The position numbers were made by a program, and so were the translations under genes. Positions 7,521 through 46,282 of a stretch of DNA of 64,000 nucleotides are shown piece after piece (the stretch's first letter is position 1; every line of letters starts with the position of its first letter). The stretch covers positions 186,001 through 250,000 of IMG/VR virus record IMGVR_UViG_3300020178_000002. One strand, 5' to 3'. A model generated the notes under the pieces. The model ran no database searches. It was not told the DNA's origin and saw nothing but the letters and a program-made list of their open reading frames with translations.

Positions 7521-7937
7521 TTAAAATTCCTTATCAAAAATAGGTCGGACATTAGGTCTGGGGTATTTTAGTTTGATCTCTGCCTTCACAGGAAGGTAGT
7601 CTCCTACAGAGAGTTTATCGAAAAGAAGGTATGCCCTGTTATATTCTTCGTAAAACCATTTTTGGATTTTCTTTTTCCCTCTGACTTCACTTACAACAAC
7701 AGACACAAGTGTTTCATCATCATGTATAAAATAAACGAATCCCCCAGCCTCTCCTCTTTTGACACCATTTATAAGAGGCTCTATTAAACCCACTGTTTTG
7801 AAATCAAGCATAAGACCATCCCAATTTTTAGATTGGGGTTTTTTTGCCAAAGCTCTCGCCTTGTCTTTAGCCCTACTATTTGATTGTCTCTCAAGACTAG
7901 CAACTCTAATTTCGAGATTCTTTAATATTTCTCTCAT
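7521..7937 (-). CDS. hypothetical protein with LEIRVASLERQS leader
   Basis: 138 aa; start coupled to the upstream gene's stop. Confidence 0.7.
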   Translation of the reverse strand: MREILKNLEIRVASLERQSNSRAKDKARALAKKPQSKNWDGLMLDFKTVGLIEPLINGVKRGEAGGFVYFIHDDETLVSVVVSEVRGKKKIQKWFYEEYNRAYLLFDKLSVGDYLPVKAEIKLKYPRPNVRPIFDKEF

Positions 7938-8278
7938 AATGTACCATCAAAGTCTTCATCTGGCTCTGGTTGACCTAAAGGTTTGGTTGGACTTTTAGGT
8001 GCAGGTGGTTTACCTCCACTGTTTTGCTCAAGAGCTGTTGTTGCTACATGAGTGTATTTGTCTAATGCTGCTTGACCTAATATATAGCCAATCTGTATGA
8101 AGCCACTTGTGACTATCATGGTAACTAGAACCATAAAGGCATAATGGTCAATTTGGGTTTTATATTCCCAGACAACATAAAACATGAGGATCTTCCAACC
8201 GATGTCTGCAATCAGATAGGCTAGGAACTTCTTGCTTTTAAGGGGGAGCTTCATTACATCTTCAACTTCTTTATTCAT
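7934..8278 (-). CDS. two-TM membrane protein (holin-like topology)
   Basis: Two hydrophobic helices and a Pro-rich charged tail. Confidence 0.6.
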   Translation of the reverse strand: MNKEVEDVMKLPLKSKKFLAYLIADIGWKILMFYVVWEYKTQIDHYAFMVLVTMIVTSGFIQIGYILGQAALDKYTHVATTALEQNSGGKPPAPKSPTKPLGQPEPDEDFDGTL

Positions 8279-8628
8279 AATCTCACCTTCAACTTAGATT
8301 TAGGGTTGCTTTGGTTTGCTTGCTGGTTAATTAAGTTTCGATTAGGGTTTCGAATTGCCAGCTTGTTCATAGATTTTTGGAAGTCATCTTCAACAGCTTG
8401 GTCATACTTTTGAGGTGCTCTGCTGAATGCATATATTTCATTCAGCCTTTCCTGCTCAAGTTCAGTCATTGAGGGCAAGAGAGCTAAGAAATCATCTCTT
8501 GCTTTCTGGTTACCATCAGAAAGAAATTCCATGATGAGGTATGCAGGCAATATAGGAGGGTTATCAGGGTCTCCCTCTATACCCTTAAGGGTATTAACCC
8601 CTGTTTTTCTTATCCAATAATTCATCAC
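8275..8628 (-). CDS. hypothetical protein (117 aa)
   Basis: ORF coupled to its neighbours. Confidence 0.65.
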   Translation of the reverse strand: MMNYWIRKTGVNTLKGIEGDPDNPPILPAYLIMEFLSDGNQKARDDFLALLPSMTELEQERLNEIYAFSRAPQKYDQAVEDDFQKSMNKLAIRNPNRNLINQQANQSNPKSKLKVRL

Positions 8629-9088
8629 CAGACTCTTTTTCTTTCTTAGATTTTGGAATCCACTCTGCTACTACACCTTTAAGTTCCACATCTTCCTCTG
8701 TCTTTGTCTTAATAACCCCACCATAGTTGACAAAGACAGAGAGCTTCTCAATAACAGCAGTCTGGAGTTCAAAGATTTGTTCCCGAAGCATTTGCATTTG
8801 GATCTGGGCATCTCTTAACCTTCCAATAAGTGCTTCTCTATCTGCATTTGCTTTTGCCAGCTTATCCTTCAAATCTTCAACTTCAGAAGGATCACGACCA
8901 GATGCAATAGCCATCATTGATGAAATAGAGCCTGTGATAACACCCAAGATACCAACAAGGACATCTCTATTTTGATCAACAATCTGCACATAGCTTAGGA
9001 AAACTATAAGCATAACTACTATAACTAAAAAGAATACAGAGAACCACCATCCTCTTTTGACTTTCAAATCTTCTTTATTGTCATTCAT
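8594..9088 (-). CDS. two-TM protein with coiled-coil tail
   Basis: WWFSVFFLVIVVMLIVFL and VLVGILGVITGSISSMMAIA helices, then a heptad-rich segment. Confidence 0.7.
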   Translation of the reverse strand: MNDNKEDLKVKRGWWFSVFFLVIVVMLIVFLSYVQIVDQNRDVLVGILGVITGSISSMMAIASGRDPSEVEDLKDKLAKANADREALIGRLRDAQIQMQMLREQIFELQTAVIEKLSVFVNYGGVIKTKTEEDVELKGVVAEWIPKSKKEKESGDELLDKKNRG

Positions 9089-9103
9089 GCCTAAACTCTT
9101 TTC

Positions 9104-9958
9104 TCAAGACGCTATTGTCTTGCTGAAAGCTTCTTTAATCATCTCAATAAAAAAAGAGATATAGTCCACCCACCAAAAATAATGGTCTACTCCCCATAGT
9201 TTTCGAGCACTTGGGTTGCTTAGGAATGGATACACCAATGCAATCATATATATAAGGTTTATGACAGCAAGTCTCTGCATAACCCACCACAGGTGTTCTT
9301 TTAACTTCCTATCTCTCATCCTGCTTTTAATTTTTCTTGGGCCACCTATCCTCTTTACTTTTTCAGAAGATGGGGGAGGCTGTAAAGACTCAATAGTTTT
9401 TCCCACAGCGTATACCTCTTGTGGTTCTCTTACACCCTTAAACCTATACAAGCCAACACAAACATACCTTGTTCCTTTAGGAAGAATTCCATTGATACGC
9501 TTTCTTAAATTAATAACGGCTTCTTTTGTTAAAAGAATCTGCTTTGCTTGACATAAGCTCATAGTACGAGCAGCTATGTTTTTTGATAAGCCTTCCAACT
9601 CCACTCTTTTAGCACCAGCACCTACAAACAGGTCATCTTGTTTAACTTCAACAATCTTTCCCCAGTGGATACCTATTCTACTGTTAAGATTCAATTTGGC
9701 AGGTATCATATCTTGATATGCCAGAGCGAAATTTACAGCATCTATAGTCCTCTCAAAAGAAAGTAGAAAGCCATCAGACCTATCAATCTCTCTTCCTTGA
9801 TACTTATAAACTAGAGATCTTGTCATTCGGTCATGTACTTGAAACCATTGAGCAGCGACATGAGCACCATTTTTTTGAACAAAAGCAGTAGACCCTATTA
9901 TATCTAACAAGACTATAGCTAAATATCTTTCTTTCATGTCTACTGTAATAGGTCTCAT
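9104..9958 (-). CDS. class III nucleotide (adenylate/guanylate-type) cyclase with C-terminal TM helix
   Basis: LLDIIGST (first metal Asp), RSDGFLLSF (second Asp), RIGIHWG, GLSKNIAAR (Asn/Arg), YRFKGV. Confidence 0.85.
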   Translation of the reverse strand: MRPITVDMKERYLAIVLLDIIGSTAFVQKNGAHVAAQWFQVHDRMTRSLVYKYQGREIDRSDGFLLSFERTIDAVNFALAYQDMIPAKLNLNSRIGIHWGKIVEVKQDDLFVGAGAKRVELEGLSKNIAARTMSLCQAKQILLTKEAVINLRKRINGILPKGTRYVCVGLYRFKGVREPQEVYAVGKTIESLQPPPSSEKVKRIGGPRKIKSRMRDRKLKEHLWWVMQRLAVINLIYMIALVYPFLSNPSARKLWGVDHYFWWVDYISFFIEMIKEAFSKTIAS

Positions 9959-9962
9959 CAGT

Positions 9963-10166
9963 CTACTCCCACATATCTCTTATTTCATCACAGGGAGTAT
10001 TTAAAACTTCGTTGGCATTCTTAATGGTGCATTTAATCAAACGAGGTCTAAAGCCTAAGCAACTTTCAATATGATCTAAAGCTTGGTCGCAAGGGCTTCT
10101 ATAAGAATCTGTATTTAAACTTCCTTCACAGGACAACAATAATAGGGATATAAGTATCTTTCGCAT
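9963..10166 (-). CDS. small Cys-rich lipoprotein
   Basis: GAGGAG RBS before ATG 10166; MRKILISLLLLS-C lipobox-like signal and four further Cys. Confidence 0.65.
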   Translation of the reverse strand: MRKILISLLLLSCEGSLNTDSYRSPCDQALDHIESCLGFRPRLIKCTIKNANEVLNTPCDEIRDMWE

Positions 10167-10176
10167 CCTAAGCTCC

Positions 10177-10497
10177 TCACACTGATATGAAAGCAAATTC
10201 TTGCTCTTTGACGATCTCTAAAGGAGAAGTTGGGTCTCTTTGAATAACCCATCTTATTCGATAACTGCCAGGTATGAAGCCTGCTGAAAGTCTTTCTGAA
10301 ACATAATAGATGCCAGCTTGATCTTGAAAAGGTATTCTATTTCCCAGACCTACTCTCCACTCTCCCCTGATAGGGTCTTTCCCATAGAACTCGTAATAAA
10401 TAAGATGAGGTTCAAAAGGATTACCTAATTGGTCAAATAGGATAATGGTTAGGTCATTTGGGCCTAGTTGCTGGCCTTGTGTGAAGACAACAGACAT
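10177..10497 (-). CDS. hypothetical beta-rich protein, probable virion component
   Basis: 106 aa ORF in an operon. Confidence 0.65.
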   Translation of the reverse strand: MSVVFTQGQQLGPNDLTIILFDQLGNPFEPHLIYYEFYGKDPIRGEWRVGLGNRIPFQDQAGIYYVSERLSAGFIPGSYRIRWVIQRDPTSPLEIVKEQEFAFISV

Positions 10498-10498
10498 A

Positions 10499-10852
10499 TC
10501 AAATCACCGATATGATATTATTTGAGGGTAAGGTTTGAGCTGGTGGTCTTACTGATATTGTCTGCTCGGCAAAAACCTCACTATCGTCTGCAACCAACAG
10601 AGCCTTATATTCAACAAAGAGTGTCTTCCCAGAGCTATCACTTGGAATCTCTAGTTTAGTGACATACCTATGTGTCTGGTCTGTCTGTTGCATTAAGACA
10701 GGACCGCTTAAAATGGTTCTTACAACCCCATTGTAAAGAAAGAGGGTCGCAGTCACATCTTTAACAGCTAAGGGCTTCGAGTCAGAGTTTAGCCATGAAA
10801 CTTGACAAGGGTGCGATTCACTTGCGGTTGCATTTGAGAAGTAAGTTATCAT
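10499..10852 (-). CDS. hypothetical beta-rich protein, probable virion component
   Basis: AGGAGG RBS; preceded by a promoter-like motif. Confidence 0.7.
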   Translation of the reverse strand: MITYFSNATASESHPCQVSWLNSDSKPLAVKDVTATLFLYNGVVRTILSGPVLMQQTDQTHRYVTKLEIPSDSSGKTLFVEYKALLVADDSEVFAEQTISVRPPAQTLPSNNIISVI

Positions 10853-10879
10853 TAGACCTCCTTTTTAGAAGTCTAATGA

Positions 10880-10893
10880 TATAATAACTATTA
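10880..10893 (-). promoter_or_regulatory. putative late promoter motif (TAATAGTTATTATA, short variant)
   Basis: Same bipartite motif with the spacer shortened by 2 nt. Confidence 0.4.
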
Positions 10894-10898
10894 ACCGA

Positions 10899-11150
10899 CT
10901 ATTCTTCCTTAGCCATATAAGTCAAAGACTTCATGGACCTTATCTCATCAACAAAAGTGAGAGCAGGAACTCTTGAGGTTCTGTTAAAGTACTCTCTCTT
11001 TAGGTCTTTGAAAGATTCTTTTTTCTCAAAGACAAAGATGACCTTGCGACCTTCCTTTTCAGTCTTCAACAAAACCATACCCACAGTTTTTAAATAAGCT
11101 GCAAAGTAAAGGTCTGAAGTCTTGTAGATAGGCTCTGGTGCAAAGTCCAT
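10899..11150 (-). CDS. DUF5659-like small protein
   Basis: YKTSDLYFAAYL...KVIFVF...F...I..MK pattern, recognised from memory. Confidence 0.6.
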   Translation of the reverse strand: MDFAPEPIYKTSDLYFAAYLKTVGMVLLKTEKEGRKVIFVFEKKESFKDLKREYFNRTSRVPALTFVDEIRSMKSLTYMAKEE

Positions 11151-11153
11151 AGT

Positions 11154-11369
11154 TTAACTTCCAGGGAGAAGGGATTGAACTCGTTTAGCCCCTTTGTCGT
11201 CAGAAGGTATCTTTACCAACTTTCCTTTTTTATCCCACTTAGCGACAAGTTTCCCACCGCCCCAAGAGGCTCTGAGTTCTTGCCCATCTGTAGTGAGGAC
11301 TCTACCCTCAAAGGGTTTTTTGTCAAGGAAAGCTCCAATAGTCTTCTTATCTAAAAGAGTGATTTTCAA
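11154..11369 (-). CDS. hypothetical protein (71 aa)
   Basis: AGGAAG RBS; in operon. Confidence 0.6.
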   Translation of the reverse strand: MKITLLDKKTIGAFLDKKPFEGRVLTTDGQELRASWGGGKLVAKWDKKGKLVKIPSDDKGAKRVQSLLPGS

Positions 11370-11399
11370 TTTCTCTTCTTCCTAGTTTAATGGTTATGG

Positions 11400-12071: not shown

Positions 12072-12089
12072 AATTTATTCTCCTTTATA

Positions 12090-12797: not shown

Positions 12798-12808
12798 ATT
12801 AATTCTCC

Positions 12809-13522: not shown

Positions 13523-13562
13523 AATAGTTCTCCTTATATCTAGTTTTCTATTTAAGGCTAGA

Positions 13563-13578
13563 TATAAAACAACTATTA
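13563..13578 (-). promoter_or_regulatory. putative late promoter motif (TAATAGTTGTTTTATA)
   Basis: Full 16-bp match upstream of the paralog triplet. Confidence 0.6.
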
Positions 13579-13580
13579 GA

Positions 13581-15081: not shown

Positions 15082-15090
15082 TGGTGCATA

Positions 15091-15106
15091 TATAAAGGAC
15101 TTATTA
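15091..15106 (-). promoter_or_regulatory. putative late promoter motif (TAATAAGTCCTTTATA)
   Basis: 16-bp match upstream of the 14680..15081 gene. Confidence 0.55.
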
Positions 15107-26547: not shown

Positions 26548-27300
26548 ATGTCAACAGATTTTCAAAACAACAGAGTCAACATTTATAATGATAACATCGG
26601 GGGTGTCTCTCTTATCCAAAGTATGGGAGATGATCTTACCATCGTAAACGCTGCAAGGGCTTCTTTAGATAAAGTAAGTACAGAATGGTCAGACAGAGAA
26701 GAAAGATTATCCAGCTTCCTCATCAGAGAAGGCCATACCTCTACCACAGAACACAATGTTTTAACATTCTGGATTAAAGTTCCTATGTTTGTTGCTCGTC
26801 AACAAATGAGACACAGAACATTCTCTTACAATGAAATATCTCGCAGATACACTTCAGATAAGATCGAGTTTTATTACCCACAAGAAATGAGAATGCAGGA
26901 CACTAAGAACAGACAAGCGAGTCTCGATGAGACTTTCAACCCTGTGATTGAGTTCGATCCTTACGACCACCCACAGTTCTTAAAGCTGGACAGTGTATCT
27001 GCTATCAAGAACCATGTAAAAGAGTCTGTGAAGCTCTATGACAAGATGATTGATAAAGGGATTGCTAGAGAGCAGGCTAGAATGATCTTGCCACAAAACC
27101 TATATACAACCTATTGGGCTACAGGTTCATTGCACAACTGGGTGAATAGCTTTGTTGCTAAAAGAGACCACCCAGATGCTCAATGGGAGATTAAACTACT
27201 AGCTAGAGAAATCAGTAGACAGATTCAAGCTCTCTGGCCTAAGGCACATGAGAACTTTGTTAAGCATGGAAAGATTCCAGACCTTAACTCCCCTATTTAG
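26548..27300 (+). CDS. thyX: FAD-dependent thymidylate synthase
   Basis: IVNAARAS, GHTS..EH, RQ.MRHRTFSYNEISRRY, EQAR..LP, HAQ-type DAQWEI. Confidence 0.93.
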   Translation: MSTDFQNNRVNIYNDNIGGVSLIQSMGDDLTIVNAARASLDKVSTEWSDREERLSSFLIREGHTSTTEHNVLTFWIKVPMFVARQQMRHRTFSYNEISRRYTSDKIEFYYPQEMRMQDTKNRQASLDETFNPVIEFDPYDHPQFLKLDSVSAIKNHVKESVKLYDKMIDKGIAREQARMILPQNLYTTYWATGSLHNWVNSFVAKRDHPDAQWEIKLLAREISRQIQALWPKAHENFVKHGKIPDLNSPI

Positions 27301-27961
27301 AGTAAATAAACTCACCATCCTCCATTGCATTAGGAAGAGTGTCTACAAGAATTTCAATCACTTTTTGTTTAAATCCTGTACTCATTCTTGATGGAAGGTC
27401 TGGGTCTTTTCTTTTTCTCAGGTTAAATGTCCAAACCCTAAGAAGCTCTTCAGCGTACCACTTTTTCTGGTCTAAAGAAGTAATAGGTTTTCTTCTTAAT
27501 ATTCTATCAAGGCTTTCAAGACCTCCCTTGTCAAGAATCAATTGAGCAACTTCTTGAGGGGTCTTCTTAACTACAGGTACTTTAGGAGCTTTTCGTATCC
27601 TACCCTTAGTTATCTTAACTTTGCCTGATTTCTTGAAATACGTTAAAGTTGCCTTGAAAGTTGGCTTGAAGACGGTTTTGCTGAAAACAAAAACAACCTT
27701 TACCTGAGTTGGCTTGTTAAGTGCTTCTAAGATATCATAATGACTGACATTCAACATATTTGCGTATGTGTGGAGAAGCGTTCCCTCTATATCTTCAACA
27801 ACATCTAAATAAACTGTGTCTACGACACCTGGCTGATCAACAATCCATTGTGCAATGTCCTCGAGAGTAGCTTTCTCCATAGGAAGCTGAAACCCTGATT
27901 TCTTCTCAAGGCTAGATGTTCTGGTTTCTAATTCTGCTATTTTTTCTTGTATTGTTTTCAT
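27293..27961 (-). CDS. hypothetical protein with KIAELETRTSSLEKKS leader
   Basis: AAGGAG RBS; promoter-like motif upstream. Confidence 0.7.
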   Translation of the reverse strand: MKTIQEKIAELETRTSSLEKKSGFQLPMEKATLEDIAQWIVDQPGVVDTVYLDVVEDIEGTLLHTYANMLNVSHYDILEALNKPTQVKVVFVFSKTVFKPTFKATLTYFKKSGKVKITKGRIRKAPKVPVVKKTPQEVAQLILDKGGLESLDRILRRKPITSLDQKKWYAEELLRVWTFNLRKRKDPDLPSRMSTGFKQKVIEILVDTLPNAMEDGEFIYSK

Positions 27962-34247: not shown

Positions 34248-35831
34248 TTACCTTCTCTCAAGCTCAATAATTTGTTTTGTGTTGTAGATACTTGCAGGGT
34301 AGGGGCTTAGAGAGATGTTGAAGAAGAGATAATGAGAACCATACTCTGACTCCTTCTTTAAGTCACCTGCCTCAATAGTGTAAGTGCCCTCTGAAAGAGA
34401 CCTACTTTGCATGGAGTTGTATCTTTGGATGGCACTTTGAAAAAACTTTAAGATAGTCTCCATCTTCCTTTCTTGACTGCTAGTAAAAGGAGTGCTTGAT
34501 TCTACTTCAAATCTAAATTGAACAGGGGAATCTGGGAGTGTTTTAGGTGTTTCAGATACAACATGGTTTGCGAAAGAGCTTCTTGTCTGCGTTTCCATTT
34601 TTTTAATAAGTTGTAATGGGATGGTCTTTTTAATAGAGGCTTGTTTCTCGGGACTCCTTTTCTTATGCTTAATCTTCCTAGAGCTACCTTTAGCAACATC
34701 TCTTTCTCTGTTCTGGTGTACACCTTTTCCAGAGCTGCCTACTCCATCTTCAAACATACCAGAGGTGTTAGGGTCTCTGAACTTAGGCATCTTGTTAGAA
34801 GGTTTACGCTTCTTTTTCTTTTTTTTCCCTGCAAGCCTAGACATGTTGTCTAGGTCTCTGAGGGCGAGGTCTATCATACTAAACCTACCTGTAATCGCAT
34901 GACCATCAAGTAAGTTAGCAAGCATTATAGCTTTCTCTCTCCTTGAGATGCCCTCAGGTAAAGACTCAAGAGCTAATCTAGCTTCTTCATCACCTACTGT
35001 AGTTTGAGATTGAATGCAGGGTAATACAGAAGCCATTCTTGAAGTTTGCTTAGGTAGGTGTCTGATAATCTCTGGAAATCTTGAGATTTCTTTAATGGTT
35101 CTTACAACTCTCCTACCCTCAATAAGCCTTACAGAGGGGATAGGGCTTCTTTCAAATTCGAGAGTGTAGTCTTCAATGCCAGGCACAGAGATTTTGTAAG
35201 TAGGGTTTTCATCAGTAGTTGACCATTGGTTTTCTACAATCAAGAAACCGAGGTGTCTTATGTTAGAAACTATTTCTCTAACTGCTTGAGGGAATGTTGT
35301 CCCTAAGCTAGCCATGATTTGTCTGCCATCAGGAGTAACTTCTCTGTCTATCATAAGAGCAGGTCTTCTAACTAAAAAGTTAGGCCATTTCTCAAACCAC
35401 TTGTTGTAGAAGTCATCTTCCCCAACAACTCTTACAGTTTTATCTGGGTTAGGGATATTGGGGTCTGCAACATGTACTTCATAACTTCCCTTTTCACCTG
35501 TCACATCATAAATCAGAGATGCGTGACTCCAATCACGACCCTCAGGATTCCATGCAATGAGAACAGGTCTACCTGAATCTGTCCATTCTTTAACTTGAGT
35601 GAGGGTAGCTGGTGTGGTGAGGGTAGCTCTACAACCGAAGTATTGGCAGCAGGCAAGTACTTCTTCCCACCTTGATCCTCTTAGTGCTTGAGCACCAATG
35701 ATCTCATTAACAGTTTCCTCATCACACTTTACACCTAGTGCTTGTAAAGCCATGCATGTAGAGGTTGCAACACAAGTGAACTGTGTTCTTTGTCTAATTG
35801 GCTTAACATCAGCTTTTGCTTTTCTTCTCAT
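34248..35831 (-). CDS. C39-like (papain-fold) cysteine peptidase fused to additional modules
   Basis: Q..Q.TC (catalytic Cys), PV.I.W...WSHA.L (His), V.VADP (Asp), followed by about 350 aa of unrelated segments. Confidence 0.8.
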   Translation of the reverse strand: MRRKAKADVKPIRQRTQFTCVATSTCMALQALGVKCDEETVNEIIGAQALRGSRWEEVLACCQYFGCRATLTTPATLTQVKEWTDSGRPVLIAWNPEGRDWSHASLIYDVTGEKGSYEVHVADPNIPNPDKTVRVVGEDDFYNKWFEKWPNFLVRRPALMIDREVTPDGRQIMASLGTTFPQAVREIVSNIRHLGFLIVENQWSTTDENPTYKISVPGIEDYTLEFERSPIPSVRLIEGRRVVRTIKEISRFPEIIRHLPKQTSRMASVLPCIQSQTTVGDEEARLALESLPEGISRREKAIMLANLLDGHAITGRFSMIDLALRDLDNMSRLAGKKKKKKRKPSNKMPKFRDPNTSGMFEDGVGSSGKGVHQNRERDVAKGSSRKIKHKKRSPEKQASIKKTIPLQLIKKMETQTRSSFANHVVSETPKTLPDSPVQFRFEVESSTPFTSSQERKMETILKFFQSAIQRYNSMQSRSLSEGTYTIEAGDLKKESEYGSHYLFFNISLSPYPASIYNTKQIIELERR

Positions 35832-35874: not shown

Positions 35875-35882
35875 ATAGAAAG

Positions 35883-38146: not shown

Positions 38147-38899
38147 ATGGAACAGAAAATTGCTTGTGAAGCCATTGTAGAGGCAATTAAGAAAGACAAT
38201 GCTCGTAAAGGGTCGAAGAGGAAAAAAGTAGACCATTGGAAAAAGGCTGCTTGTGCTTCTTTAGAAATCAAGAAGATGGGCAATGCAAGATGGACAGCGA
38301 TCTTGGAGTATGGCTATAAGAACCAATACTTCAAAAAAGATATGTATGGAGATAAAGAGATTCTCTCTCTTGCTGATAAAGCTCCTATTCTGGACTTCTT
38401 ATCTTCTGAGAAGCCTATTGTAGAAGAACCTAAACCACCTGCTAATGAGAAAAGAGATTCTAAGGGATATAAGCCCTCAGATTATCTTTCAGGGAATATT
38501 CTCAAGACTTCTGCCACTAGACCTAAATCTATCAAAGAAAACAGCCACAGAGCAGATTACGCACCCAGAGAGGGTGATCTTATGTGGGCTATCTATCCAG
38601 ATGGAAAATTAGTCCATGTTGAAATCCAAGAGGTCAGCTTTGGGCTTCATGTAGTACCTATGAACAAAAAAGATGGTCATTGGAGCTACCTTACCTCAAA
38701 TGATGTATTTGAAGATAAAGACTCTGCAAAGAATGCCCAGAGCGAGAGAGTTATATCCAGAGACAAAAAAGGTATCTATTGGTCAAAAGACGCAATGGGT
38801 CAGGAAGAATATGCCTTGTTCAAAGAGTATGAGGAACACAGGGAAGAGTTTAAAAGATTTTTAGAAAGTAAGAGCAATGAATCTAACGAAAATAGTTAA
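38147..38899 (+). CDS. hypothetical protein (250 aa)
   Basis: AAGGA RBS. Confidence 0.7.
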   Translation: MEQKIACEAIVEAIKKDNARKGSKRKKVDHWKKAACASLEIKKMGNARWTAILEYGYKNQYFKKDMYGDKEILSLADKAPILDFLSSEKPIVEEPKPPANEKRDSKGYKPSDYLSGNILKTSATRPKSIKENSHRADYAPREGDLMWAIYPDGKLVHVEIQEVSFGLHVVPMNKKDGHWSYLTSNDVFEDKDSAKNAQSERVISRDKKGIYWSKDAMGQEEYALFKEYEEHREEFKRFLESKSNESNENS

Positions 38900-39329
38900 T
38901 GGTAAAAGGTCTATAAAGAAACTACCTCATTGGTATTGTCTTCAAAAAAGCACTCCAGAAAGCTGGTTTGAAAGGTGGATTACTTTCACCTGCCATTTAA
39001 TGGTAGAGCTTGGGTTTAAAGTTCAAAAAGATACAGGAACTGTAAAGTTAAAAGGTATTGGATATAGTCAATACGTTATTTTTGAACACAAAGATATAGG
39101 AGAACTCTCTTTCTATTTTGAAAGGAAAAGAGTTCAAGAAGGTGGGATTATCACCATTAAAGACGTTATTAATGCAGGAGATGATTTTACCATTGAGGTA
39201 GAAATTAACACAGTCGCTAATTGTAAACTAAACCCTAATTCTTCCCCATACATGAGCAGGATAGATGTGGGAAGTTCAATGATTGAGACAATCAGAAAAT
39301 TTTGGATAGAAAAGTCAAAAAAGCAATGA
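38877..39329 (+). CDS. hypothetical protein, tandem paralog A
   Basis: MNLTKIVNGKRSIKKLPHWY...; homologous to the next gene. Confidence 0.75.
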   Translation: MNLTKIVNGKRSIKKLPHWYCLQKSTPESWFERWITFTCHLMVELGFKVQKDTGTVKLKGIGYSQYVIFEHKDIGELSFYFERKRVQEGGIITIKDVINAGDDFTIEVEINTVANCKLNPNSSPYMSRIDVGSSMIETIRKFWIEKSKKQ

Positions 39330-39769
39330 ATATAACGGAAATAGTTAATGGTAAAAGGTCTATAAAGAAACTGCCTCGTTGGTACTCCTGTAATAAAAGT
39401 ACCCCAGAAAGATGGTTTGAAAGGTGGGCTAAATTCACTGATGATTTAATGATAGAGCTTGGATTTGAATCCTTACAAGATTCAGACATTATGAAGTTTG
39501 GTAAAGGCAAGGCATGGAGCAGAGTTCTTAATTTTGAACATAAAGAAATAGGCTCAATTGAAATCACTCTTGAAAGAAAGAGGTCTCAAGATGGAGGATT
39601 GATCATCGTTAGGAACACAGCCATACCAACAGATGGTGCTGTTGAGGTAGATATTAACACAGTCCTCAAGAATCCATCTATTAACCACAACAATCCCTAT
39701 ATGAGTAGGGTAGATGTTGGAAATGCAATAATCAGCTCTATTAGACTCATCTGGCGAAAAAACCAATAA
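39326..39769 (+). CDS. hypothetical protein, tandem paralog B
   Basis: MNITEIVNGKRSIKKLPRWY...; ATGA overlap at 39326-39329. Confidence 0.75.
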   Translation: MNITEIVNGKRSIKKLPRWYSCNKSTPERWFERWAKFTDDLMIELGFESLQDSDIMKFGKGKAWSRVLNFEHKEIGSIEITLERKRSQDGGLIIVRNTAIPTDGAVEVDINTVLKNPSINHNNPYMSRVDVGNAIISSIRLIWRKNQ

Positions 39770-39807
39770 GACTATTTTAGGTGGAGTATAAATAGACTAC
39801 AAAGACC

Positions 39808-40434
39808 TTAGATCTTTGTAAGAAGAAGCCTCTCAAAGTGGAGTCTGTCTCCTCTGTTTAGTTTCTGCTCAAGCAGGTTCTTTATCTGCTTCTCAGTCAG
39901 AGCTTCTTGATTCTCTATCTTTCTTAAATTCTTTGCTTTAGAGAAGTCGCAGTTGTCGAATCGACCAGAGATAAGCCTAACACCTGTGAAGTCTGTCATC
40001 CAGAATGTAGTGTTCCTGAAAACACAACTTGCAAAGATACTGTTCTTTAGAGAGCCTTTAGAGTAATGAACACCTATGAACTGACATTGGAGAAAGTCAC
40101 AGTTAATGAAATAGTTGTCTTTAAAACGCTGGCTTATGAACTTTACTTTTTCAAAGCTCTTGCCATCAATTTTCAGTCCTATATTTTCTTCTGCTTCATA
40201 TTCTTTATTTGAGAATGAATCAGTAAGAGCTATTTCTTGTTTCTTTTCTAATTTAGACAAGGCTGCATCGAATTCTTCTTTAGTAATCTTACCTCCCATG
40301 TAGATTTTATTTAGAAATTTATACTCTCTATAAAAAACCTTATCCATTTCTTTTTCCAATTGGTTGAATGGGATTGAAGATGCTTTTTCAAGTCTGGCGA
40401 TTCTGATCTCAAGGGATTGTATTTTATCTTTCAT
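39808..40434 (-). CDS. pentapeptide-repeat protein with LEIRIARLEK leader
   Basis: Pentads FINCD FLQCQ FIGVH...FASCV FRNTT; C-terminus nearly identical to the next gene's. Confidence 0.8.
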   Translation of the reverse strand: MKDKIQSLEIRIARLEKASSIPFNQLEKEMDKVFYREYKFLNKIYMGGKITKEEFDAALSKLEKKQEIALTDSFSNKEYEAEENIGLKIDGKSFEKVKFISQRFKDNYFINCDFLQCQFIGVHYSKGSLKNSIFASCVFRNTTFWMTDFTGVRLISGRFDNCDFSKAKNLRKIENQEALTEKQIKNLLEQKLNRGDRLHFERLLLTKI

Positions 40435-40476
40435 CTTGTTTCTTTCTAAGTTTAGAATACAAAAAAATATAGGGTC

Positions 40477-41127
40477 TTAGATCTTTGTAAGAAGAAGCTT
40501 CTCAAAGTGGAGTCTGTCTCCTCTACTAAGTTCCTGGTCAAGCAAATTACTTATCTGTTTATTAGATAATACGTCTTTATTTAATAGTTTTAAATTCCTT
40601 GCTTTTCTAAGGTCGCATCTCTCAAATCTGACTGATTGAAGTCTAGCACCCTTAAAGTCTGTCATGTAAGCTGTGTAGTCTTTAAAAACACAAGCTAAAA
40701 TAAAAGAATCTACGAAAGACCCTTTAGAATCGGATGTTTGATAAAAATTACATTCAGACAAAATACAGTTTAAGAAATGAGTATTCTTAAGTCGCATTCT
40801 TCTAAATGTGACCTTTTCAAGATCTGATCCCTCAAACAGATTATTTGTAAACTTGCCACCTTCAAATTCATAATTTTTGATGTCATGCTTCCCTGTCACA
40901 CCACCGATAGAGTCATCCATATTCTCAAGATAGTCATGAGAATAATATTTCGTAGAATCCAAATAGTAATCATCTTCCCTAGTCAAATCATAGAAGGTCT
41001 GCTCCTTTGGGATCTTCTTATTGTACTGTTTCCTGATTATCTTTCTTAGTTCCATTTCGTCCTTTGATGGCTTCCTGTATTTATATTCATTGAGATTATA
41101 TGGGAGTGGATATTTATTTTTTGACAT
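40477..41127 (-). CDS. pentapeptide-repeat protein (paralog)
   Basis: FEGSD LEKVT FRRMR LKNTH FLNCI LSECN; the likely start is ATG 41127. Confidence 0.8.
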   Translation of the reverse strand: MSKNKYPLPYNLNEYKYRKPSKDEMELRKIIRKQYNKKIPKEQTFYDLTREDDYYLDSTKYYSHDYLENMDDSIGGVTGKHDIKNYEFEGGKFTNNLFEGSDLEKVTFRRMRLKNTHFLNCILSECNFYQTSDSKGSFVDSFILACVFKDYTAYMTDFKGARLQSVRFERCDLRKARNLKLLNKDVLSNKQISNLLDQELSRGDRLHFEKLLLTKI

Positions 41128-41184
41128 TTCTATCTCTTTCTTTAAGTTGGTTTTGTCTACATAGAGTGTGTGTATATAAATAAT

Positions 41185-41225
41185 AAAAAAAAGGGCTGAC
41201 CCCAAACAAATGGAAGCCAGCCCTT
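41185..41225 (-). terminator. intrinsic terminator
   Basis: AAGGGCTG...CAGCCCTT stem followed by a U-tract on the minus strand, after the 41271 gene. Confidence 0.65.
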
Positions 41226-41270
41226 AGAGCGTAGGCGAAACACCTACTTGACGAAACCAGAGTTTATAGC

Positions 41271-42026: not shown

Positions 42027-42143
42027 TGTCTCCTTACGTTATATGTTTAAAAAAAGAGCTTTGGGTTTTCAGAACTATCTGCTTTCCCTTTGCTCATAGG
42101 TCTTATACAATATATGAATAAGGAGTGAAATTATTTTTCACCT

Positions 42144-42611
42144 CTAAGAGAAATAATCAAATACCTTGAGGATGAGTTGCTTTAATTTCAAGAAGCCACC
42201 AAAGATAGACTTAAAAATAGTCTGCAAGAAAATAACTACAACAGCTAAAGTAGCAATAGCTAACATAGTAATCTCAGGCAAGTAGTATCCTATTGCAACT
42301 AAGTCAAAGTCAGAGAGTGGAGCTGCTACTTTGGTTTTATGGCTATCTAAAATATATTCAATCTGATTTACAGGGTTTGAACCAGCTTTGGCTTTAACCA
42401 TTTTAAGATACTTTTTAAAACCAGAAGATCGAGTGACTGATGGGAAGTGCTTAAGGATATTCTTCTTTCCTGCACTATGAAATACATCTGAGACTCTTTC
42501 TTTAATCCTCACAAACTTTTTAAAGTGTTTTGAAGTGATTAAATCTATCTCAAGCATTGCCACCTTGTCCTCAAGGATAGCGATTTTCTCTGATGCTGTT
42601 AAGATCTTCAT
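42144..42611 (-). CDS. membrane-anchored protein with LTASEKIAILE leader (paralog B)
   Basis: Start MKILTASEK at 42611; C-terminal TM helix. Confidence 0.7.
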   Translation of the reverse strand: MKILTASEKIAILEDKVAMLEIDLITSKHFKKFVRIKERVSDVFHSAGKKNILKHFPSVTRSSGFKKYLKMVKAKAGSNPVNQIEYILDSHKTKVAAPLSDFDLVAIGYYLPEITMLAIATLAVVVIFLQTIFKSIFGGFLKLKQLILKVFDYFS

Positions 42612-42612
42612 G

Positions 42613-43167
42613 TTAGCTTCCAGACTTGCCCATGAACCAGCCAACAATAAATGTCACTAAACTCATCCAGAAAGCAGTTCCAATTGAGACATCAAAGAAA
42701 GCTTCTTTGTTTTGAGAACCTAGCTTCTTAATACCTGTCACATTAAGCACCCATACAACAATAGAACCTACAAGAAGGCAAGCAACAATAAGAATCTCTG
42801 GGTTTAAAATAAACTCCATCAAGTCAAAGCTTACACGATTCATTGAAGCCATTCTTCTCTGAGCGTTATTTCTCTCTTCAAGAATAAACTTAACTTGCTT
42901 TACAGGATTAGAACCTACTTCCTTACGAAGTGCAGCTAAAGCTTTTTTAAACTCAGGTGTCTTTGAAACACGACCATACTCTTTTGCAACTCTTTTTGGA
43001 CCGCCTGCTTTCTTGAAAACTTGACCTACTTTACTTTGAACACCTTTGAAAGCTTGAAGGCCTTCTGAAACCTGTTGTCTCATTTCATCAAGAATGGCTT
43101 GCTTTTCAAGTTGAGCAACTCTGTTCTCAAGAATTGCAATTTTCTCTGATGCCGTTAAATGTCTCAT
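42613..43167 (-). CDS. membrane-anchored protein with LTASEKIAILE leader (paralog A)
   Basis: MRHLTASEKIAILENRVAQLEKQA; shares the GSNPV.Q..(F/Y)IL core with paralog B; two C-terminal TM helices. Confidence 0.75.
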   Translation of the reverse strand: MRHLTASEKIAILENRVAQLEKQAILDEMRQQVSEGLQAFKGVQSKVGQVFKKAGGPKRVAKEYGRVSKTPEFKKALAALRKEVGSNPVKQVKFILEERNNAQRRMASMNRVSFDLMEFILNPEILIVACLLVGSIVVWVLNVTGIKKLGSQNKEAFFDVSIGTAFWMSLVTFIVGWFMGKSGS

Positions 43168-43208
43168 TGCTTTTTCCTTTTGTTAAAGATTATAAAGGAC
43201 AGCGTAGG

Positions 43209-43224
43209 TATAAATAGACTATAA
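43209..43224 (-). promoter_or_regulatory. putative late promoter motif (TTATAGTCTATTTATA)
   Basis: Match upstream of the 42613..43167 gene. Confidence 0.6.
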
Positions 43225-43252
43225 ACGTAATATATTTTAAACAGGAGGCTGC

Positions 43253-43825
43253 ATGAGAGTTATTGTAGAGGGGTTGATTGGAGTAGGCAAAAGCACATTC
43301 ACAACGGAGTTTGCAAGAATACATAAGCTAAACCCAATGTATGAGTCTGTTGATGATAATCCTTTTCTCTCAAAGTTCTATTCAGACCCAGAGAGATGGG
43401 CTTACACTCTTCAAATGCATTTCCTCTACGACAGATACTCAAAGCACCTTCCAGAGAACATCATCTTAGACAGGTCTATCTGGGGTGACCTTTGCTTTGC
43501 AAACATACTAAGAGAAGATGGTACTCTGACAGAAGAAGAGTATGAGTCTTATTTGAGCCATTCAAAAGTTTTAACAAACCATGTCCCTAAAGTAGACTTG
43601 TGTATACACCTTGATGTACCTGTCTATAAAGCAATGGACAGGATTAGTAAAAGGGGGAGAGGTTTTGAGACTTCTATTTCAGAAGATTACTTGGTTAGGC
43701 TCAAGAAAGAAATAGACTCACTCCCCTCTTTCTTACCCTCTGACATTAAGTATGTTAAAATTGATTGGGAAGACATGAGCCTAGATGAAATATCTAGATA
43801 TATTTCAAATATAGATTTAAAATAA
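43253..43825 (+). CDS. deoxynucleoside kinase
   Basis: IVEGLIGVGKST P-loop, E.V..NPFL..FY.DP.RWA...Q, DRS, RI..RGR. Confidence 0.9.
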   Translation: MRVIVEGLIGVGKSTFTTEFARIHKLNPMYESVDDNPFLSKFYSDPERWAYTLQMHFLYDRYSKHLPENIILDRSIWGDLCFANILREDGTLTEEEYESYLSHSKVLTNHVPKVDLCIHLDVPVYKAMDRISKRGRGFETSISEDYLVRLKKEIDSLPSFLPSDIKYVKIDWEDMSLDEISRYISNIDLK

Positions 43826-45355
43826 GGATACTTGACCTTTCTCATCTAGCTTTAGTCTTTCTTCTTTATATATTTCGCAGCTATTTTCGTTTACTTGTTC
43901 CCTTAAGTTTGAAGGTGCTGATCTGCCTTTCCTCGTTGTATTCGCTTGTCTTCTTAGTGCTTCATCAGACCTTAAAGGTAAGGAATCCATAGTGTTAGGG
44001 GTTGCCCATATAGATTCCTCTATATCTACACCCCTCTCCTCAGCTTCAACTTGAACCTGTAGAGTAGGTGCGAAGGTCTCTTTGCCCTGCTCTAAGCGAC
44101 TCTTCATTCTTGAGATATAATGACGTAGGTTCTCACCCCTCTGTGAAGCTGGAGGAGTTGACCAATTCTCTCCATAAATCAACGAAGGCTCTTCTTGCAG
44201 TATCTGGAACAACTCCATTTCCAAGCATTCTGAGCTCATCCGTTCTATTATCAAAGGACTCGTACAGCTTGGTTGCACCCACCCTATTGGAAGCCCCATC
44301 AAGGTCTCTACCCACCTCGGGTTCAACTTCATTGCAGCGTCCTTGCCCATGCTCACACGATCTGCGAAGTTCAGAGAGTGTGACTCCCCCACCCCTTTCG
44401 CTTTCCTTCGACCCGTCATTGTCAGAGTTATCTCTTTGTGGTGTATTTCCTGCGTTGTTGGAGTTGGCCACCCATATAAAGGGATGCTCGCTTCCTTCTC
44501 TTGAGTCTCCTTCAGGAGATCCTGATATATCTCTATTGCGTGAGGGTTCACCTGCTCCCGTAGATTGCCTGGATGGGAGCGTCTTTTCCTCCCCCCTGCT
44601 CTTGCTAGTCTTCTCAATGCCTCGTCGCTCCTCTGGTCTAGATGATCGAGAGTATTGGGAGTCCCCCAGAGTGACTCTTGGAGGCTCCCATGAGTATTGG
44701 TCTCTTCCTCTTGAGGATGGGTATATAGAGCCACTTGTGTCTCGGTTTCGGTCAAGGAGTCCATTGACCCATTCCAAGCTTTCTCTTTCGGTACCTCTTT
44801 TAATACCAAGAATGAAGACTCGCTTCCTTCTATGTGGAGCACCGACTTCTCTCGCTGAGAATATACCTGCCGTTGCTTCGTAACCCACCCTCTCCAATTC
44901 TCTAAGAACATGGAGCAAAACCGATGTTCCTTTTGGATCTGACCAATCATCTGATTTGAGTTCTGCTGAGAGGATTCCTTCGACATTCTCAAGGAAAATA
45001 ACGGAAGGTTGAGATACTTTAACTCCTCTGATGATATGTGGGAAGAGGTGTCTTGGGTCTGAGTCTGCTTTTCTTTTTCCTGCTGAACTAAAGGGCTGAC
45101 AAGGGAAGCCTCCTGACAAGATATCCACTTTTCCACGAAAGATTTCCCAGTCGAGGGTTTTAAGATTCGACCAGATAGGTGCTGGCTCAATAAACCCTTT
45201 TTCCATCTTTGCAACCAAGTTGCAGATTGGGAAGCTTTCGATCTCCACATAAGTGATTGTTCTGACATCTCCGAGAGCTTTTTTAAGTCCGATGTCGATT
45301 CCCCCATAACCTGCACAGAGTGATAGGTGTTTAAGTTCTTTGGTACTATCCACAT
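43817..45355 (-). CDS. alternative-frame C5-methyltransferase beta subunit (motif IX plus TRD-like repeats)
   Basis: 512 aa open frame fully overlapping the MTase gene; contains LNPRWVETLMGLPIGW (motif IX-like) and four W-x-T-P modules; ATG 6 nt after AGGAG. Confidence 0.7.
   Translation of the reverse strand: MWIVPKNLNTYHSVQVMGESTSDLKKLSEMSEQSLMWRSKASQSATWLQRWKKGLLSQHLSGRILKPSTGKSFVEKWISCQEASLVSPLVQQEKEKQTQTQDTSSHISSEELKYLNLPLFSLRMSKESSQQNSNQMIGQIQKEHRFCSMFLENWRGWVTKQRQVYSQREKSVLHIEGSESSFLVLKEVPKEKAWNGSMDSLTETETQVALYTHPQEEETNTHGSLQESLWGTPNTLDHLDQRSDEALRRLARAGGRKRRSHPGNLREQVNPHAIEIYQDLLKETQEKEASIPLYGWPTPTTQEIHHKEITLTMTGRRKAKGVGESHSLNFADRVSMGKDAAMKLNPRWVETLMGLPIGWVQPSCTSPLIIERMSSECLEMELFQILQEEPSLIYGENWSTPPASQRGENLRHYISRMKSRLEQGKETFAPTLQVQVEAEERGVDIEESIWATPNTMDSLPLRSDEALRRQANTTRKGRSAPSNLREQVNENSCEIYKEERLKLDEKGQVSLF
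44133..45353 (-). CDS. DNA cytosine-5 methyltransferase, alpha subunit
   Basis: CAGYGG (I), GGFPCQPFS (IV), LENV (VI), PHRRKRVF (VIII), LGNGVVP (X); GTG start 8 nt after AGGAG. Confidence 0.9.
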   Translation of the reverse strand: MDSTKELKHLSLCAGYGGIDIGLKKALGDVRTITYVEIESFPICNLVAKMEKGFIEPAPIWSNLKTLDWEIFRGKVDILSGGFPCQPFSSAGKRKADSDPRHLFPHIIRGVKVSQPSVIFLENVEGILSAELKSDDWSDPKGTSVLLHVLRELERVGYEATAGIFSAREVGAPHRRKRVFILGIKRGTERESLEWVNGLLDRNRDTSGSIYPSSRGRDQYSWEPPRVTLGDSQYSRSSRPEERRGIEKTSKSRGEEKTLPSRQSTGAGEPSRNRDISGSPEGDSREGSEHPFIWVANSNNAGNTPQRDNSDNDGSKESERGGGVTLSELRRSCEHGQGRCNEVEPEVGRDLDGASNRVGATKLYESFDNRTDELRMLGNGVVPDTARRAFVDLWRELVNSSSFTEG

Positions 45356-45411
45356 TAATTTCTCCTATAATAACATGCTACACTTATATATTATACCTAA
45401 ACCCCCCAGAC

Positions 45412-45450
45412 AAAAAAGCCCCACTTCCCAGTTAAGGGAAGCAGGGCTTA
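45412..45450 (-). terminator. intrinsic terminator
   Basis: AAGCCC.ACTTCCC / GGGAAG.AGGGCTT stem with a U-tract on the minus strand. Confidence 0.7.
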
Positions 45451-45476
45451 AAAAGATACCAACATAGAACTTTTAA

Positions 45477-45773
45477 TTAGTTTGTTGGAGGACTTGTTCT
45501 CTTACACTTTTTATGGAAGTCAATGCTGTGGTATGACTCTCCATTAGATAGTGTCCATCTCTTCTTTGAAGTGTTTTTTGCTGTCTGGACTCCATCAATG
45601 CCTTCACAAATGTATGTTTTGTGCTCTTGCATCTCTGATACAGAAGCAACACACAAGTACATCATGAAGAAGCCAATGAGGAGTCTAATATCATCTCTTA
45701 AAAGACCATACATAAAGGTCGCAAGAGACATTAGGAAGAACACACAAAAAATAATTGTCTGACCATCTTTCAT
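45477..45773 (-). CDS. small membrane protein (98 aa)
   Basis: Two N-terminal hydrophobic helices. Confidence 0.6.
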   Translation of the reverse strand: MKDGQTIIFCVFFLMSLATFMYGLLRDDIRLLIGFFMMYLCVASVSEMQEHKTYICEGIDGVQTAKNTSKKRWTLSNGESYHSIDFHKKCKRTSPPTN

Positions 45774-45907
45774 TTTAAAAACCTTTCTTAATAATTTAAT
45801 CTACTTAAAGTTATCTGTCCAGAGAGGGGGGGTGAAAAAACTTAACCTCCGCTTGCTGGTAATAAGGCTATTATCTAAAAAATGAAGAAATTGTTAAAAA
45901 TCTTATG

Positions 45908-46282
45908 CTAGCCATTCCATTCAAAATTAAAGAATGGGCTATGGAACATCCCTTTAACTTTCCATTCCAGAAGCCAGCTTTCGTCAAGCCTATCTGAATA
46001 TATTTTTATAGGCTCTTTGTTTTTAATAGCTCTAGCAAACTCATTTTTCTTGACATAGAGCTTCTCATTCTTAGTGACCCTAGTAGGTACACCCGTGCCT
46101 CCTAATGGTCTTAGAAGCAAGTTTGTTGTATTTGGGAAATAAACCCCATCCCCCATATTTTTTCTAAGGAATGTTCTAATGTGCTTGTACCTGAAGTACG
46201 CTTTGTTTTTATTCCCACCAAAGAAAAAAGCTTGCTTCTCTAATCTGGCAATACGACTTTCAAGGTTTGCGATGCTGTCCAT
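45908..46282 (-). CDS. hypothetical protein with LESRIARLEKQA leader
   Basis: GAGGAG RBS before ATG 46282. Confidence 0.7.
   Translation of the reverse strand: MDSIANLESRIARLEKQAFFFGGNKNKAYFRYKHIRTFLRKNMGDGVYFPNTTNLLLRPLGGTGVPTRVTKNEKLYVKKNEFARAIKNKEPIKIYSDRLDESWLLEWKVKGMFHSPFFNFEWNG

What the first reader, a model, noticed from the sequence alone, without database searches (positions are those of the whole stretch)
7521..46282. Shared N-terminal coiled-coil leader LE-x-R-(I/V)-A-x-LE-K
Six genes with different bodies begin with the same leader: LEIRVASLERQS (7521), LETRTSSLEKKS (27293), LEIRIARLEKAS (39808), SEKIAILEDKVAMLE (42144), SEKIAILENRVAQLEKQA (42613) and LESRIARLEKQA (45908). Only one of the two pentapeptide paralogs carries it, so it behaves as a portable module. 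It often ends in a K-x-A/S site, suggesting a cleavable targeting propeptide (inference).
Basis: partly seen in the sequence, partly recalled or inferred. Interest (0 to 1): 0.7.

Follow-up and report, generated by a model that had tools for sequence, protein, structure and literature searches.

The report
Shared cargo tag on huge-phage proteins
About one gene in eleven of this 312-kb uncultured phage starts with the same 25-residue helical tag, which ends in a motif that otherwise piles up in the phage's scaffold and head protease; it is most likely a removable tag that loads varied proteins into the virus head, and it would mark which proteins the phage injects into its host.

Summary
The window lies in a complete 312,136-bp phage-G-like huge phage. 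All six window genes (minus strand) start with the leader M-(R/K)x-(T/S)-A-S/A-(E/Q)-x-I-R-x-L-E-x-R-(I/V)-A-R-L-E-(K/R)-x-(A/S)-(S/G). Genome-wide 28 genes carry it, always directly after an ATG, on 21 unrelated bodies. Related phages of 31-47% GC carry 8-31 copies. In a 1.84-billion-protein library, 1,127 cluster representatives match, and 148 of the best 150 match at the N-terminus.

Selection acts on the protein, because synonymous codons vary freely. The end motif [KR]-x-A-[SG] is 4-12 times enriched in the scaffold and the head-maturation protease. It is almost absent from major capsid, portal and decoration proteins. A genome-wide ranking puts scaffold and protease among the top four of 331 proteins. 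The cultured relative Tunturi_5 gives the same kind of ranking.

Best reading (about 0.6): a capsid-targeting propeptide removed by the prohead protease, analogous to the T4 CTS but unrelated in sequence. Cleavage and packaging are inferred, not shown. A sister phage uses a different leader with the same ending.

The parts
7521..7937 (-). Leader-bearing gene, 138 aa; leader is encoded at 7875-7937 (MREILKNLEIRVASLERQS)
27293..27961 (-). Leader-bearing gene, 222 aa; leader at 27890-27961 (MKTIQEKIAELETRTSSLEKKS), the most divergent copy
39808..40434 (-). Leader-bearing pentapeptide-repeat protein, 208 aa; leader at 40372-40434
   Evidence: (Pentapeptide_4, E 9e-14)
40477..41205 (-). Paralog of the pentapeptide protein without a working leader; only a decayed remnant aligns with the leader
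42144..42611 (-). Leader-bearing gene, 155 aa counted from the ATG at 42611, with two hydrophobic segments; leader at 42534-42611
42613..43167 (-). Leader-bearing gene, 184 aa, paralog of the previous gene, with two hydrophobic segments; leader at 43090-43167
45908..46282 (-). Leader-bearing gene, 124 aa counted from the ATG at 46282; leader at 46223-46282
5462..5953 (-). Gene with a degenerate leader-like N-terminus (MAIMNRIQRVASLHMEKQAAS)
57860..59527 (-). Portal protein of the same phage; has no [KR]xA[SG] site
   Evidence: (phrog_16240, E 1e-33)

Best explanation
The leader is an N-terminal propeptide that works as a capsid-loading tag. It is a roughly 20-residue amphipathic helix (heptad core I-L-I-L with invariant E, R, A and E beside it), followed by a recognition site of the phage's own head-maturation protease, [KR]-x-A-[SG]. 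Proteins that carry it would be recruited into the assembling prohead, through a partner not yet identified; scaffold or protease are the natural candidates. During maturation the protease, which also chops up the scaffold, would trim off the tag. The matured cargo would stay in the head and be delivered with the DNA. Cargo includes a pentapeptide-repeat DNA mimic, a JmjC/cupin oxygenase and a family with membrane-like segments. Shown: the tag, its N-terminal position, its portability, protein-level selection, and the distribution of the motif. Inferred: cleavage, the exact scissile bond, recruitment and ejection.
For: (1) 28 genes of 331 start with the tag, on 21 unrelated bodies.
(2) It is conserved in relatives of 31, 45 and 47% GC, with 8-31 copies each. 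Synonymous codons vary freely.
(3) In a logo of 103 distinct leaders, conservation stops right after (K/R)-x-(A/S)-(S/G).
(4) [KR]xA[SG] in scaffolds: 6/0.9, 4/1.05, 7/1.2, 12/1.6 and 9/1.4 observed/expected. In proteases: 3-5 against about 0.6. In 15 capsid, portal and decoration proteins: 1 against 5.5. 'R.AS' is among the top unbiased patterns in scaffolds.
(5) A genome-wide ranking in G000 places scaffold 2nd, protease 4th and leader proteins 3rd and 5th of 331. In cultured Tunturi_5 the top two of 353 are the annotated DNA ejection protein and the scaffold-position gene.
(6) The site lies where protease domain and C-terminal domain meet, and three times just before the conserved scaffold tail. 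This is the same logic as the herpesvirus R and M sites (PMC4498786).
(7) 13 of 150 metagenomic members carry an internal half-leader, R-(I/V/T)-A-R-L-E-(K/R)-x-(A/S), between domains, as a cleavage site would.
(8) Leader genes sit inside or next to the head module in G003, G000 and LR745208.
(9) The sister phage LR745208 (capsid protein 89% identical) lacks this tag but has another on at least 11 genes, mostly ending L-K-E-A-G/A.
(10) Cargo is almost never shared between genomes whose capsid proteins are 94-99% identical, like T4 internal proteins. The T4 CTS precedent, and ejection proteins with membrane segments, are described in PMC5694885.
Against: There is no direct evidence that any of these proteins is in a virion or is cleaved; no member with this tag is cultured. 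The protease's catalytic class and specificity are unknown: there was no Pfam or PDB match, and the AF2 model failed. Twelve of the 28 G000 leaders end in K-x-S-S/A, K-x-A-A/I/M/F or another variant that misses the strict [KR]xA[SG] motif. Half of the cargo has hydrophobic, membrane-like segments, which also fits a membrane role. Twenty-eight to 31 packaged species is many. The scaffold coil I suspected as the partner does not track leader presence cleanly. The co-folding test gave no answer. R-x-x-S also resembles a kinase site.
Confidence: 0.6

Rival explanations
1. It is an address tag for a destination other than the head. The helix would bring varied, often membrane-anchored proteins to the host membrane or to a phage-built structure, for example by docking on a common receptor such as the phage's actin-like protein.
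For: 13-14 of the 28 proteins have hydrophobic TM-like segments. Ten leader genes cluster around a Volactin-family actin homolog, and G001 has the same arrangement.
Against: Volactin is absent from G002, G003 and G004, which keep the leader. The leader has no hydrophobic core or twin-arginine-type signal. This reading does not explain why the end motif concentrates in scaffold and protease, nor why leader genes sit in head modules.
Confidence: 0.13
2. It is only a short self-associating coiled coil that dimerises or trimerises its bearers. It would not target them anywhere and would not be removed.
For: It has a regular a/d heptad with g-e' charge pairs (R15/E20) and is predicted helical.
Against: Two heptads are short for a stable coil. 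L, E, R, A, L and E are 95-100% invariant over 103 leaders, including the outward-facing Ala, which goes beyond what a coil needs. The position is strictly N-terminal (148 of 150). The K/R-x-A-S end is conserved, and internal half-copies lie between domains. No generic coiled coil in three related phages matches the HMM.
Confidence: 0.1
3. It is a protease-dependent switch in the cytoplasm. The tag would keep effectors inactive, or mark them for timed degradation, until the phage protease cuts it, without any packaging.
For: The same cleavage-motif evidence applies. A JmjC enzyme and a DNA mimic could plausibly be latent pro-proteins.
Against: Prohead proteases of this kind act inside the closed shell (PMC5694885, PMC12749128). 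A helix of about 20 residues conserved upstream of the site is more than a cleavage site needs. Leader genes lie in head modules.
Confidence: 0.1
4. The conservation lies in the nucleic acid, as a shared translation-initiation, regulatory or recombination element at the 5' ends of genes.
For: The element always sits at the gene start. A T[TA]TATAG motif is enriched upstream.
Against: Leu, Glu, Arg, Ala and Ile codons vary synonymously between copies. The peptide is conserved across genomes of 31-47% GC.
Confidence: 0.01

Closest known systems
Phage T4 capsid targeting sequence (CTS) of internal proteins IPI-III and Alt
   Same: It is a short N-terminal peptide shared by unrelated, fast-evolving proteins. 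It ends at the prohead-protease motif, which also riddles the scaffolding core. It loads cargo into the prohead and is then removed (PMC5694885).
   Different: There is no sequence similarity. The T4 CTS is about 10 residues and is cut after Glu in L/I-x-E by gp21. Here the tag is a helix of about 25 residues, the motif is [KR]-x-A-[SG], the protease has no Pfam match, the copy number is far larger (28-31 genes), and function is untested.
Propeptides of phiKZ / SPN3US / 201phi2-1 head and ejection proteins
   Same: These are giant phages with many processed inner-head proteins. Paralogs share identical N-termini, there are several sites per propeptide, and one ejection protein has a membrane segment (PMC5694885).
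   Different: Those propeptides are mostly longer than 100 residues, are cut at A/S/G-x-E, and are not one uniform tag. This phage belongs to the phage-G-like lineage, not the phiKZ-like one.
Herpesvirus assemblin R and M sites
   Same: A protease is fused to a scaffold-like C-terminal part and released at a site between them, and further sites lie just before the capsid-binding tail of the scaffold (PMC4498786). From my own knowledge, not checked here, those sites are cut between Ala and Ser, which matches x-A-S.
   Different: Neither the scissile bond nor the fold was established here. Herpesviruses do not use the site as a portable cargo tag.
Encapsulin cargo-loading peptides and microcompartment encapsulation peptides
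   Same: These are short terminal peptides that deliver unrelated cargo into a protein shell; microcompartment peptides are N-terminal amphipathic helices. The shell protein here is a small HK97-fold protein.
   Different: Those tags are not removed by a protease, and they bind the shell protein. Here the shell protein is 89-99% identical between phages that use different tags, which argues against the shell as the partner.
HK97 protease C-terminal encapsidation signal
   Same: It is a portable segment that carries a protein into an HK97-type prohead (cited in PMC12749128; details are from my own knowledge).
   Different: It is C-terminal, belongs to a single protein, and is not a family-wide tag.

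Membership tests
CTS-type capsid-targeting propeptide (functional class) | Short N-terminal peptide shared by otherwise unrelated proteins of one phage | tested here: met
   28 genes and 21 body families; 148 of 150 representatives carry it at the N-terminus
CTS-type capsid-targeting propeptide (functional class) | Peptide ends at the prohead-protease motif, which is also concentrated in scaffold or core proteins | tested here: met
   This is sequence statistics only. [KR]xA[SG] is 4-12 times enriched in scaffold and protease and is depleted in capsid, portal and decoration proteins. The pattern was replicated in Tunturi_5.
CTS-type capsid-targeting propeptide (functional class) | Peptide is actually removed by the protease during head maturation | not testable with these tools
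   No proteomic data are available, and no cultured member carries the tag
CTS-type capsid-targeting propeptide (functional class) | Peptide is necessary and sufficient for incorporation into proheads | tested here: inconclusive
   Co-folding of leader and scaffold gave no answer. Gene position in head modules is only suggestive.
T4 CTS / gp21 system (homology) | L/I-x-E cleavage motif and a T4 gp21-type protease | tested here: not met
   The leader consensus differs. The protease matches only phrog_18299 and the Tunturi_5 protease, with no Pfam or PDB hit.
Phage-G-like huge phages | Major capsid protein homologous to phage G gp27, within a protease-scaffold-decoration-capsid module | tested here: met
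   PDB 6wkk at E 6e-63; 38% identity to phage G and 47% to Tunturi_5; conserved module
Sec/Tat signal peptide | N-terminal basic region followed by a hydrophobic core of 10-20 residues | tested here: not met
   The leader is an amphipathic, charged helix without a hydrophobic run
Generic coiled coil | Heptad a/d hydrophobic pattern without further position-specific constraint | tested here: not met
   A heptad pattern is present, but six positions are 95-100% invariant. The HMM finds nothing in three related phages of 300-500 kb.

The most novel reading that the evidence does not exclude
This phage lineage uses interchangeable peptide 'address codes'. Type 1 is the LE-R-IARLE helix. Type 2 is LIRLAHENP-LRP-LLPLLKEA, found in LR745208, with traces in G003 and other relatives. 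Both would feed a hypervariable arsenal of more than 1,000 cargo families into the head for co-injection. The tag alone would then predict the injected effector proteome of uncultured huge phages. The tag plus the [KR]xA[SG] protease would form a self-contained, transplantable protein-packaging system.
Probability: 0.35. Interest if true: 0.8.

Novelty: new variant of a known kind. Interest (0 to 1): 0.62.

Why it matters
If the tag is a head-loading signal, it works as a sequence-only marker. It would identify the packaged and probably injected proteins of a widespread, uncultured clade of 230-375-kb phages (573 capsid-gene relatives in IMG/VR). That gives a catalogue of more than 1,100 mostly unknown cargo families, good candidates for first-strike anti-defence factors such as the tagged DNA-mimic-like pentapeptide protein. 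It also predicts the specificity of an uncharacterised head-protease family shared with the cultured phage Tunturi_5 and possibly phage G, where it can be tested. Finally, it offers a compact tag-plus-protease pair for loading foreign proteins into very large capsids. The concept has a well-known precedent in T4, so this extends a known principle rather than establishing a new one.

Tried and rejected
- Co-folding the scaffold (residues 85-555) with the first 45 residues of a leader protein gave no answer: score 0.00 and low pLDDT. This is evidence neither for nor against binding.
- The AF2 model of the 7-member cargo family (pLDDT 49) and of the protease domain (pLDDT 38) were too poor for fold searches, so none was run.
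- Pfam and PDB sequence searches did not classify the protease.
- Pfam and PHROGs gave no function for 26 of the 28 cargo bodies.
- Volactin as the docking partner was rejected, because it is missing in three genomes that carry the leader.
- The scaffold basic coil (LKAANARL) as partner looked promising, since it is absent from LR745208. However, several loci have leaders and no strict match to that coil, so the idea is not supported.
- The 783-aa protein richest in sites is not detectably related to the Tunturi_5 ejection protein.
- Tunturi_5 has no shared N-terminal tag of its own. Phage G and Tunturi_5 lack this one.
- Literature searches found no earlier description of this leader.
Full report
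**Context.** The window is bases 186,001-250,000 of a single 312,136-bp contig (38.4% GC). IMG/VR records it as a complete virus genome with direct terminal repeats. It encodes:
- a portal (window 57860-59527, phrog_16240, E 1e-33);
- a head-maturation protease (genome 176,745-178,133, phrog_18299, E 1.6e-16; 44% identical to the annotated protease of Tunturiibacter phage Tunturi_5);
- a very acidic scaffold-like protein, a decoration-like protein and a 292-aa major capsid protein, which matches phage G gp27 (PDB 6wkk, E 6e-63);
- RecA, a clamp loader, a UvrD-like helicase, PolA, ribonucleotide reductase and six tRNAs.

It is therefore a phage-G-like huge phage. Its capsid gene has 573 relatives in IMG/VR at 91% identity or more.

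**Observation.**
Each begins with the leader directly after an ATG that is preceded by a ribosome-binding site.
- A strict degenerate DNA pattern for the core hits the window four times against 0.02 expected.
- An HMM built from the leaders finds 28 N-terminal copies in the whole genome (E 1e-6 to 1e-14) and almost nothing internal. That is about 9% of 331 genes.
- With the leader removed, the 28 proteins fall into 21 groups with no detectable similarity: one family of seven, one pair (the window genes 42144 and 42613) and 19 singletons.
- Leu, Glu, Arg, Ala and Ile codons differ freely between copies, so selection acts on the peptide and not on the DNA.

**Distribution.**
- Complete or near-complete relatives with 31%, 45% and 47% GC carry 8, 31 and 16 copies (12 in a partial one), with the same core.
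- A logo from 103 distinct leaders reads M-R-R-(T/S)-A-S-E-(V/I)-I-R-x-L-E-x-R-(I/V)-A-R-L-E-(K/R)-(Q/E)-(A/S)-(S/G). L, E, R, A, L and E are 95-100% invariant, and there is no conservation after the last position.
- A profile search of 1.84 billion cluster representatives returns 1,127 proteins at E 0.001 or better. Of the best 150, 148 have the leader within the first 20 residues, and their 144 bodies form 119 unrelated clusters.
- The HMM finds nothing in phage G, Tunturi_5 or LR745208.1, which are 300-500 kb each. The match is therefore not generic coiled-coil similarity.

**What the end of the leader is.** The leader ends in [KR]-x-A-[SG]. I tested that motif on proteins that played no part in defining it.
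- Scaffold orthologs of five phages have 6, 4, 7, 12 and 9 copies against 0.9-1.6 expected from shuffles.
- Proteases have 3-5 copies against about 0.6 expected.
- Fifteen capsid, portal and decoration proteins together have 1 copy against 5.5 expected (Poisson p 0.026).
- In an unbiased scan of gapped tri-residue patterns, 'R.AS' (20 against 1.5) is among the most enriched in scaffolds, and 'K.AS' (12 against 1.35) is enriched in proteases.
- Ranking all 331 G000 proteins by enrichment puts an unknown 783-aa protein first (10 against 1.2), the scaffold second, the protease fourth, and leader-bearing proteins third and fifth.
- In cultured Tunturi_5, the same ranking of 353 ORFs puts the annotated 'DNA ejection protein' gp328 first (8 against 1.5) and the scaffold-position gene gp332 second (6 against 1.1). 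Capsid and tail proteins have none.
- The sites sit where one would expect maturation cuts. One lies between the protease domain and its C-terminal domain (WVDKSAS / WLAKAAS). Three lie just before the conserved C-terminal tail of the scaffold (KKAS, RQAS, REAS). This mirrors the release and maturation sites of herpesvirus protease-scaffold proteins (PMC4498786). That those sites are cut between Ala and Ser is my own recollection, not checked here.
- Thirteen of the 150 metagenomic members carry an internal half-leader, R-(I/V/T)-A-R-L-E-(K/R)-x-(A/S), between two domains, as a polyprotein cleavage site would.
- Ten G000 leader proteins also have a K-x-A-S about 20 residues from their C-terminus.

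**Link to the head.**
- In G003 the gene order is portal, leader gene, leader gene, large coiled protein, protease, scaffold, decoration, capsid, leader gene, leader gene.
- In G000 two leader genes, one of them a Cupin_8/JmjC enzyme, lie 2-3 kb downstream of the capsid gene.
- In LR745208 a tagged gene lies between the scaffold and decoration genes.
- A T[TA]TATAG motif 35-60 nt upstream is enriched at leader genes (7 of 27 against 14 of 304, p 6e-4). It also precedes the decoration/capsid operon. It is a possible shared late promoter.

**A second tag.** LR745208.1 has a capsid protein 89% identical and an orthologous head module, but it lacks this leader. Instead, at least 11 genes with unrelated bodies begin with M-T-T-L-R-S-K-L-I-R-L-A-H-E-N-P-x-L-R-P-x-L-L-P-L-L-K-E-A-(G/A). 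The ending L-K-E-A-G is the same as in many G000 leaders. Weak copies of this second tag also occur in G003 and other relatives. Because the capsid protein is nearly identical while the tag differs, the reader of the tag is more likely a variable component (scaffold, 34-41% identity, or protease) than the shell.

**Cargo.**
- Only two of the 28 bodies have Pfam domains: a pentapeptide-repeat protein in the window, and the JmjC/cupin oxygenase.
- About half have hydrophobic segments, as known for some ejection proteins (SPN3US gp47, PMC5694885).
- Bodies are almost never shared between genomes whose capsid proteins are 94-99% identical. This recalls the hypervariable internal-protein loci of T4-like phages.
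- The pentapeptide paralog without the tag is 39% identical and shows only a decayed remnant of it.

**Interpretation.** The simplest account is a T4-CTS-like system that arose independently. The amphipathic helix recruits cargo to the prohead interior, and the maturation protease removes the tag at [KR]-x-A-[SG] while it degrades the scaffold (precedent in PMC5694885). Confidence is about 0.6. The anatomy, the portability and the motif statistics are shown. Cleavage, the scissile bond, the binding partner and ejection are inferred. The rivals each explain less:
- a membrane or compartment address tag (Volactin was excluded as a general partner);
- a plain oligomerisation coil;
- a cytoplasmic pro-protein switch;
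- a nucleic-acid element, which the codon data exclude.

**What failed.** The co-folding test gave no answer. Two AF2 models were unusable. The protease could not be assigned to a catalytic class. The suspected scaffold coil partner does not correlate cleanly with leader presence. I found no earlier description of this leader in the literature.

**Verdict.** It is best filed as a new, sequence-distinct variant of the capsid-targeting propeptide principle. It yields a testable prediction of protease specificity and a large catalogue of candidate packaged effectors.

Noticed in passing
L008:17152-18144 (+) = genome 157152-158144, outside the window: This is a phage-encoded actin homolog of the Volactin family (PF25216, E 5e-74), flanked on both sides by leader genes. 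It is present in G000 and G001 but absent from G002, G003 and G004.
   Followed up: partly
LR745208.1 (loci L148-L172), e.g. 398171-398575(-): A different shared N-terminal tag, MTTLRSKLIRLAHENPxLRPxLLPLLKEA(G/A), sits on at least 11 unrelated proteins. One of these genes lies between the scaffold and decoration genes. Weak copies occur in G003 and in L070-L074.
   Followed up: partly
window 38877-39329 (+) and 39302-39769 (+); also genome 141551-144828: Seven small ORFs share a third N-terminal motif, M(E)MSLTE(I/V)VNGKR. Its function is unknown.
   Followed up: no
L011:7191-9542 (-) = genome 257191-259542: A 783-aa protein with no family match has 10 [KR]xA[SG] sites against 1.2 expected, the strongest enrichment in the genome. 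It is predicted to be a major protease substrate, such as a core or ejection protein.
   Followed up: partly
window 54638-57391 (+): The ribonucleotide reductase large subunit is interrupted by an intein with a LAGLIDADG endonuclease domain.
   Followed up: no
genome 8355-8966, 9039-9935, 21788-22612, 90020-92425, 146213-147049, 151847-156669: Ten leader proteins with hydrophobic segments also share a C-terminal tail: K-x-A-S, then (Y/F)-P, then about 10 residues, then L-E, about 20 residues from the end. This suggests trimming at both termini.
   Followed up: partly
P0028, P0029, P0031, P0040, P0046 and others (metagenomic representatives): These proteins have the N-terminal leader plus an internal half-leader or a second full leader between domains. 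They could be polyproteins or fused gene calls.
   Followed up: partly
upstream of genome 9039, 80556, 91547, 146213, 179922, 181629, 183903, 228613, 311226 and others: A T[TA]TATAG motif lies 35-60 nt upstream of starts. It is enriched at leader genes (odds ratio 7, p 6e-4) and also sits before the decoration/capsid operon. It is a candidate late promoter.
   Followed up: partly
L010:4900-6267 (+) = genome 184900-186267, running into window 1-267: A eukaryotic-type topoisomerase IB (PF01028, E 4e-17) is encoded directly after the two leader genes that lie downstream of the capsid gene.
   Followed up: no
window 34248-35831 (-): A 527-aa protein has a weak Peptidase_C39-like N-terminal domain (E 1.6e-4) and three [KR]xA[SG] sites. 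A T[TA]TATAG motif lies upstream of it.
   Followed up: no
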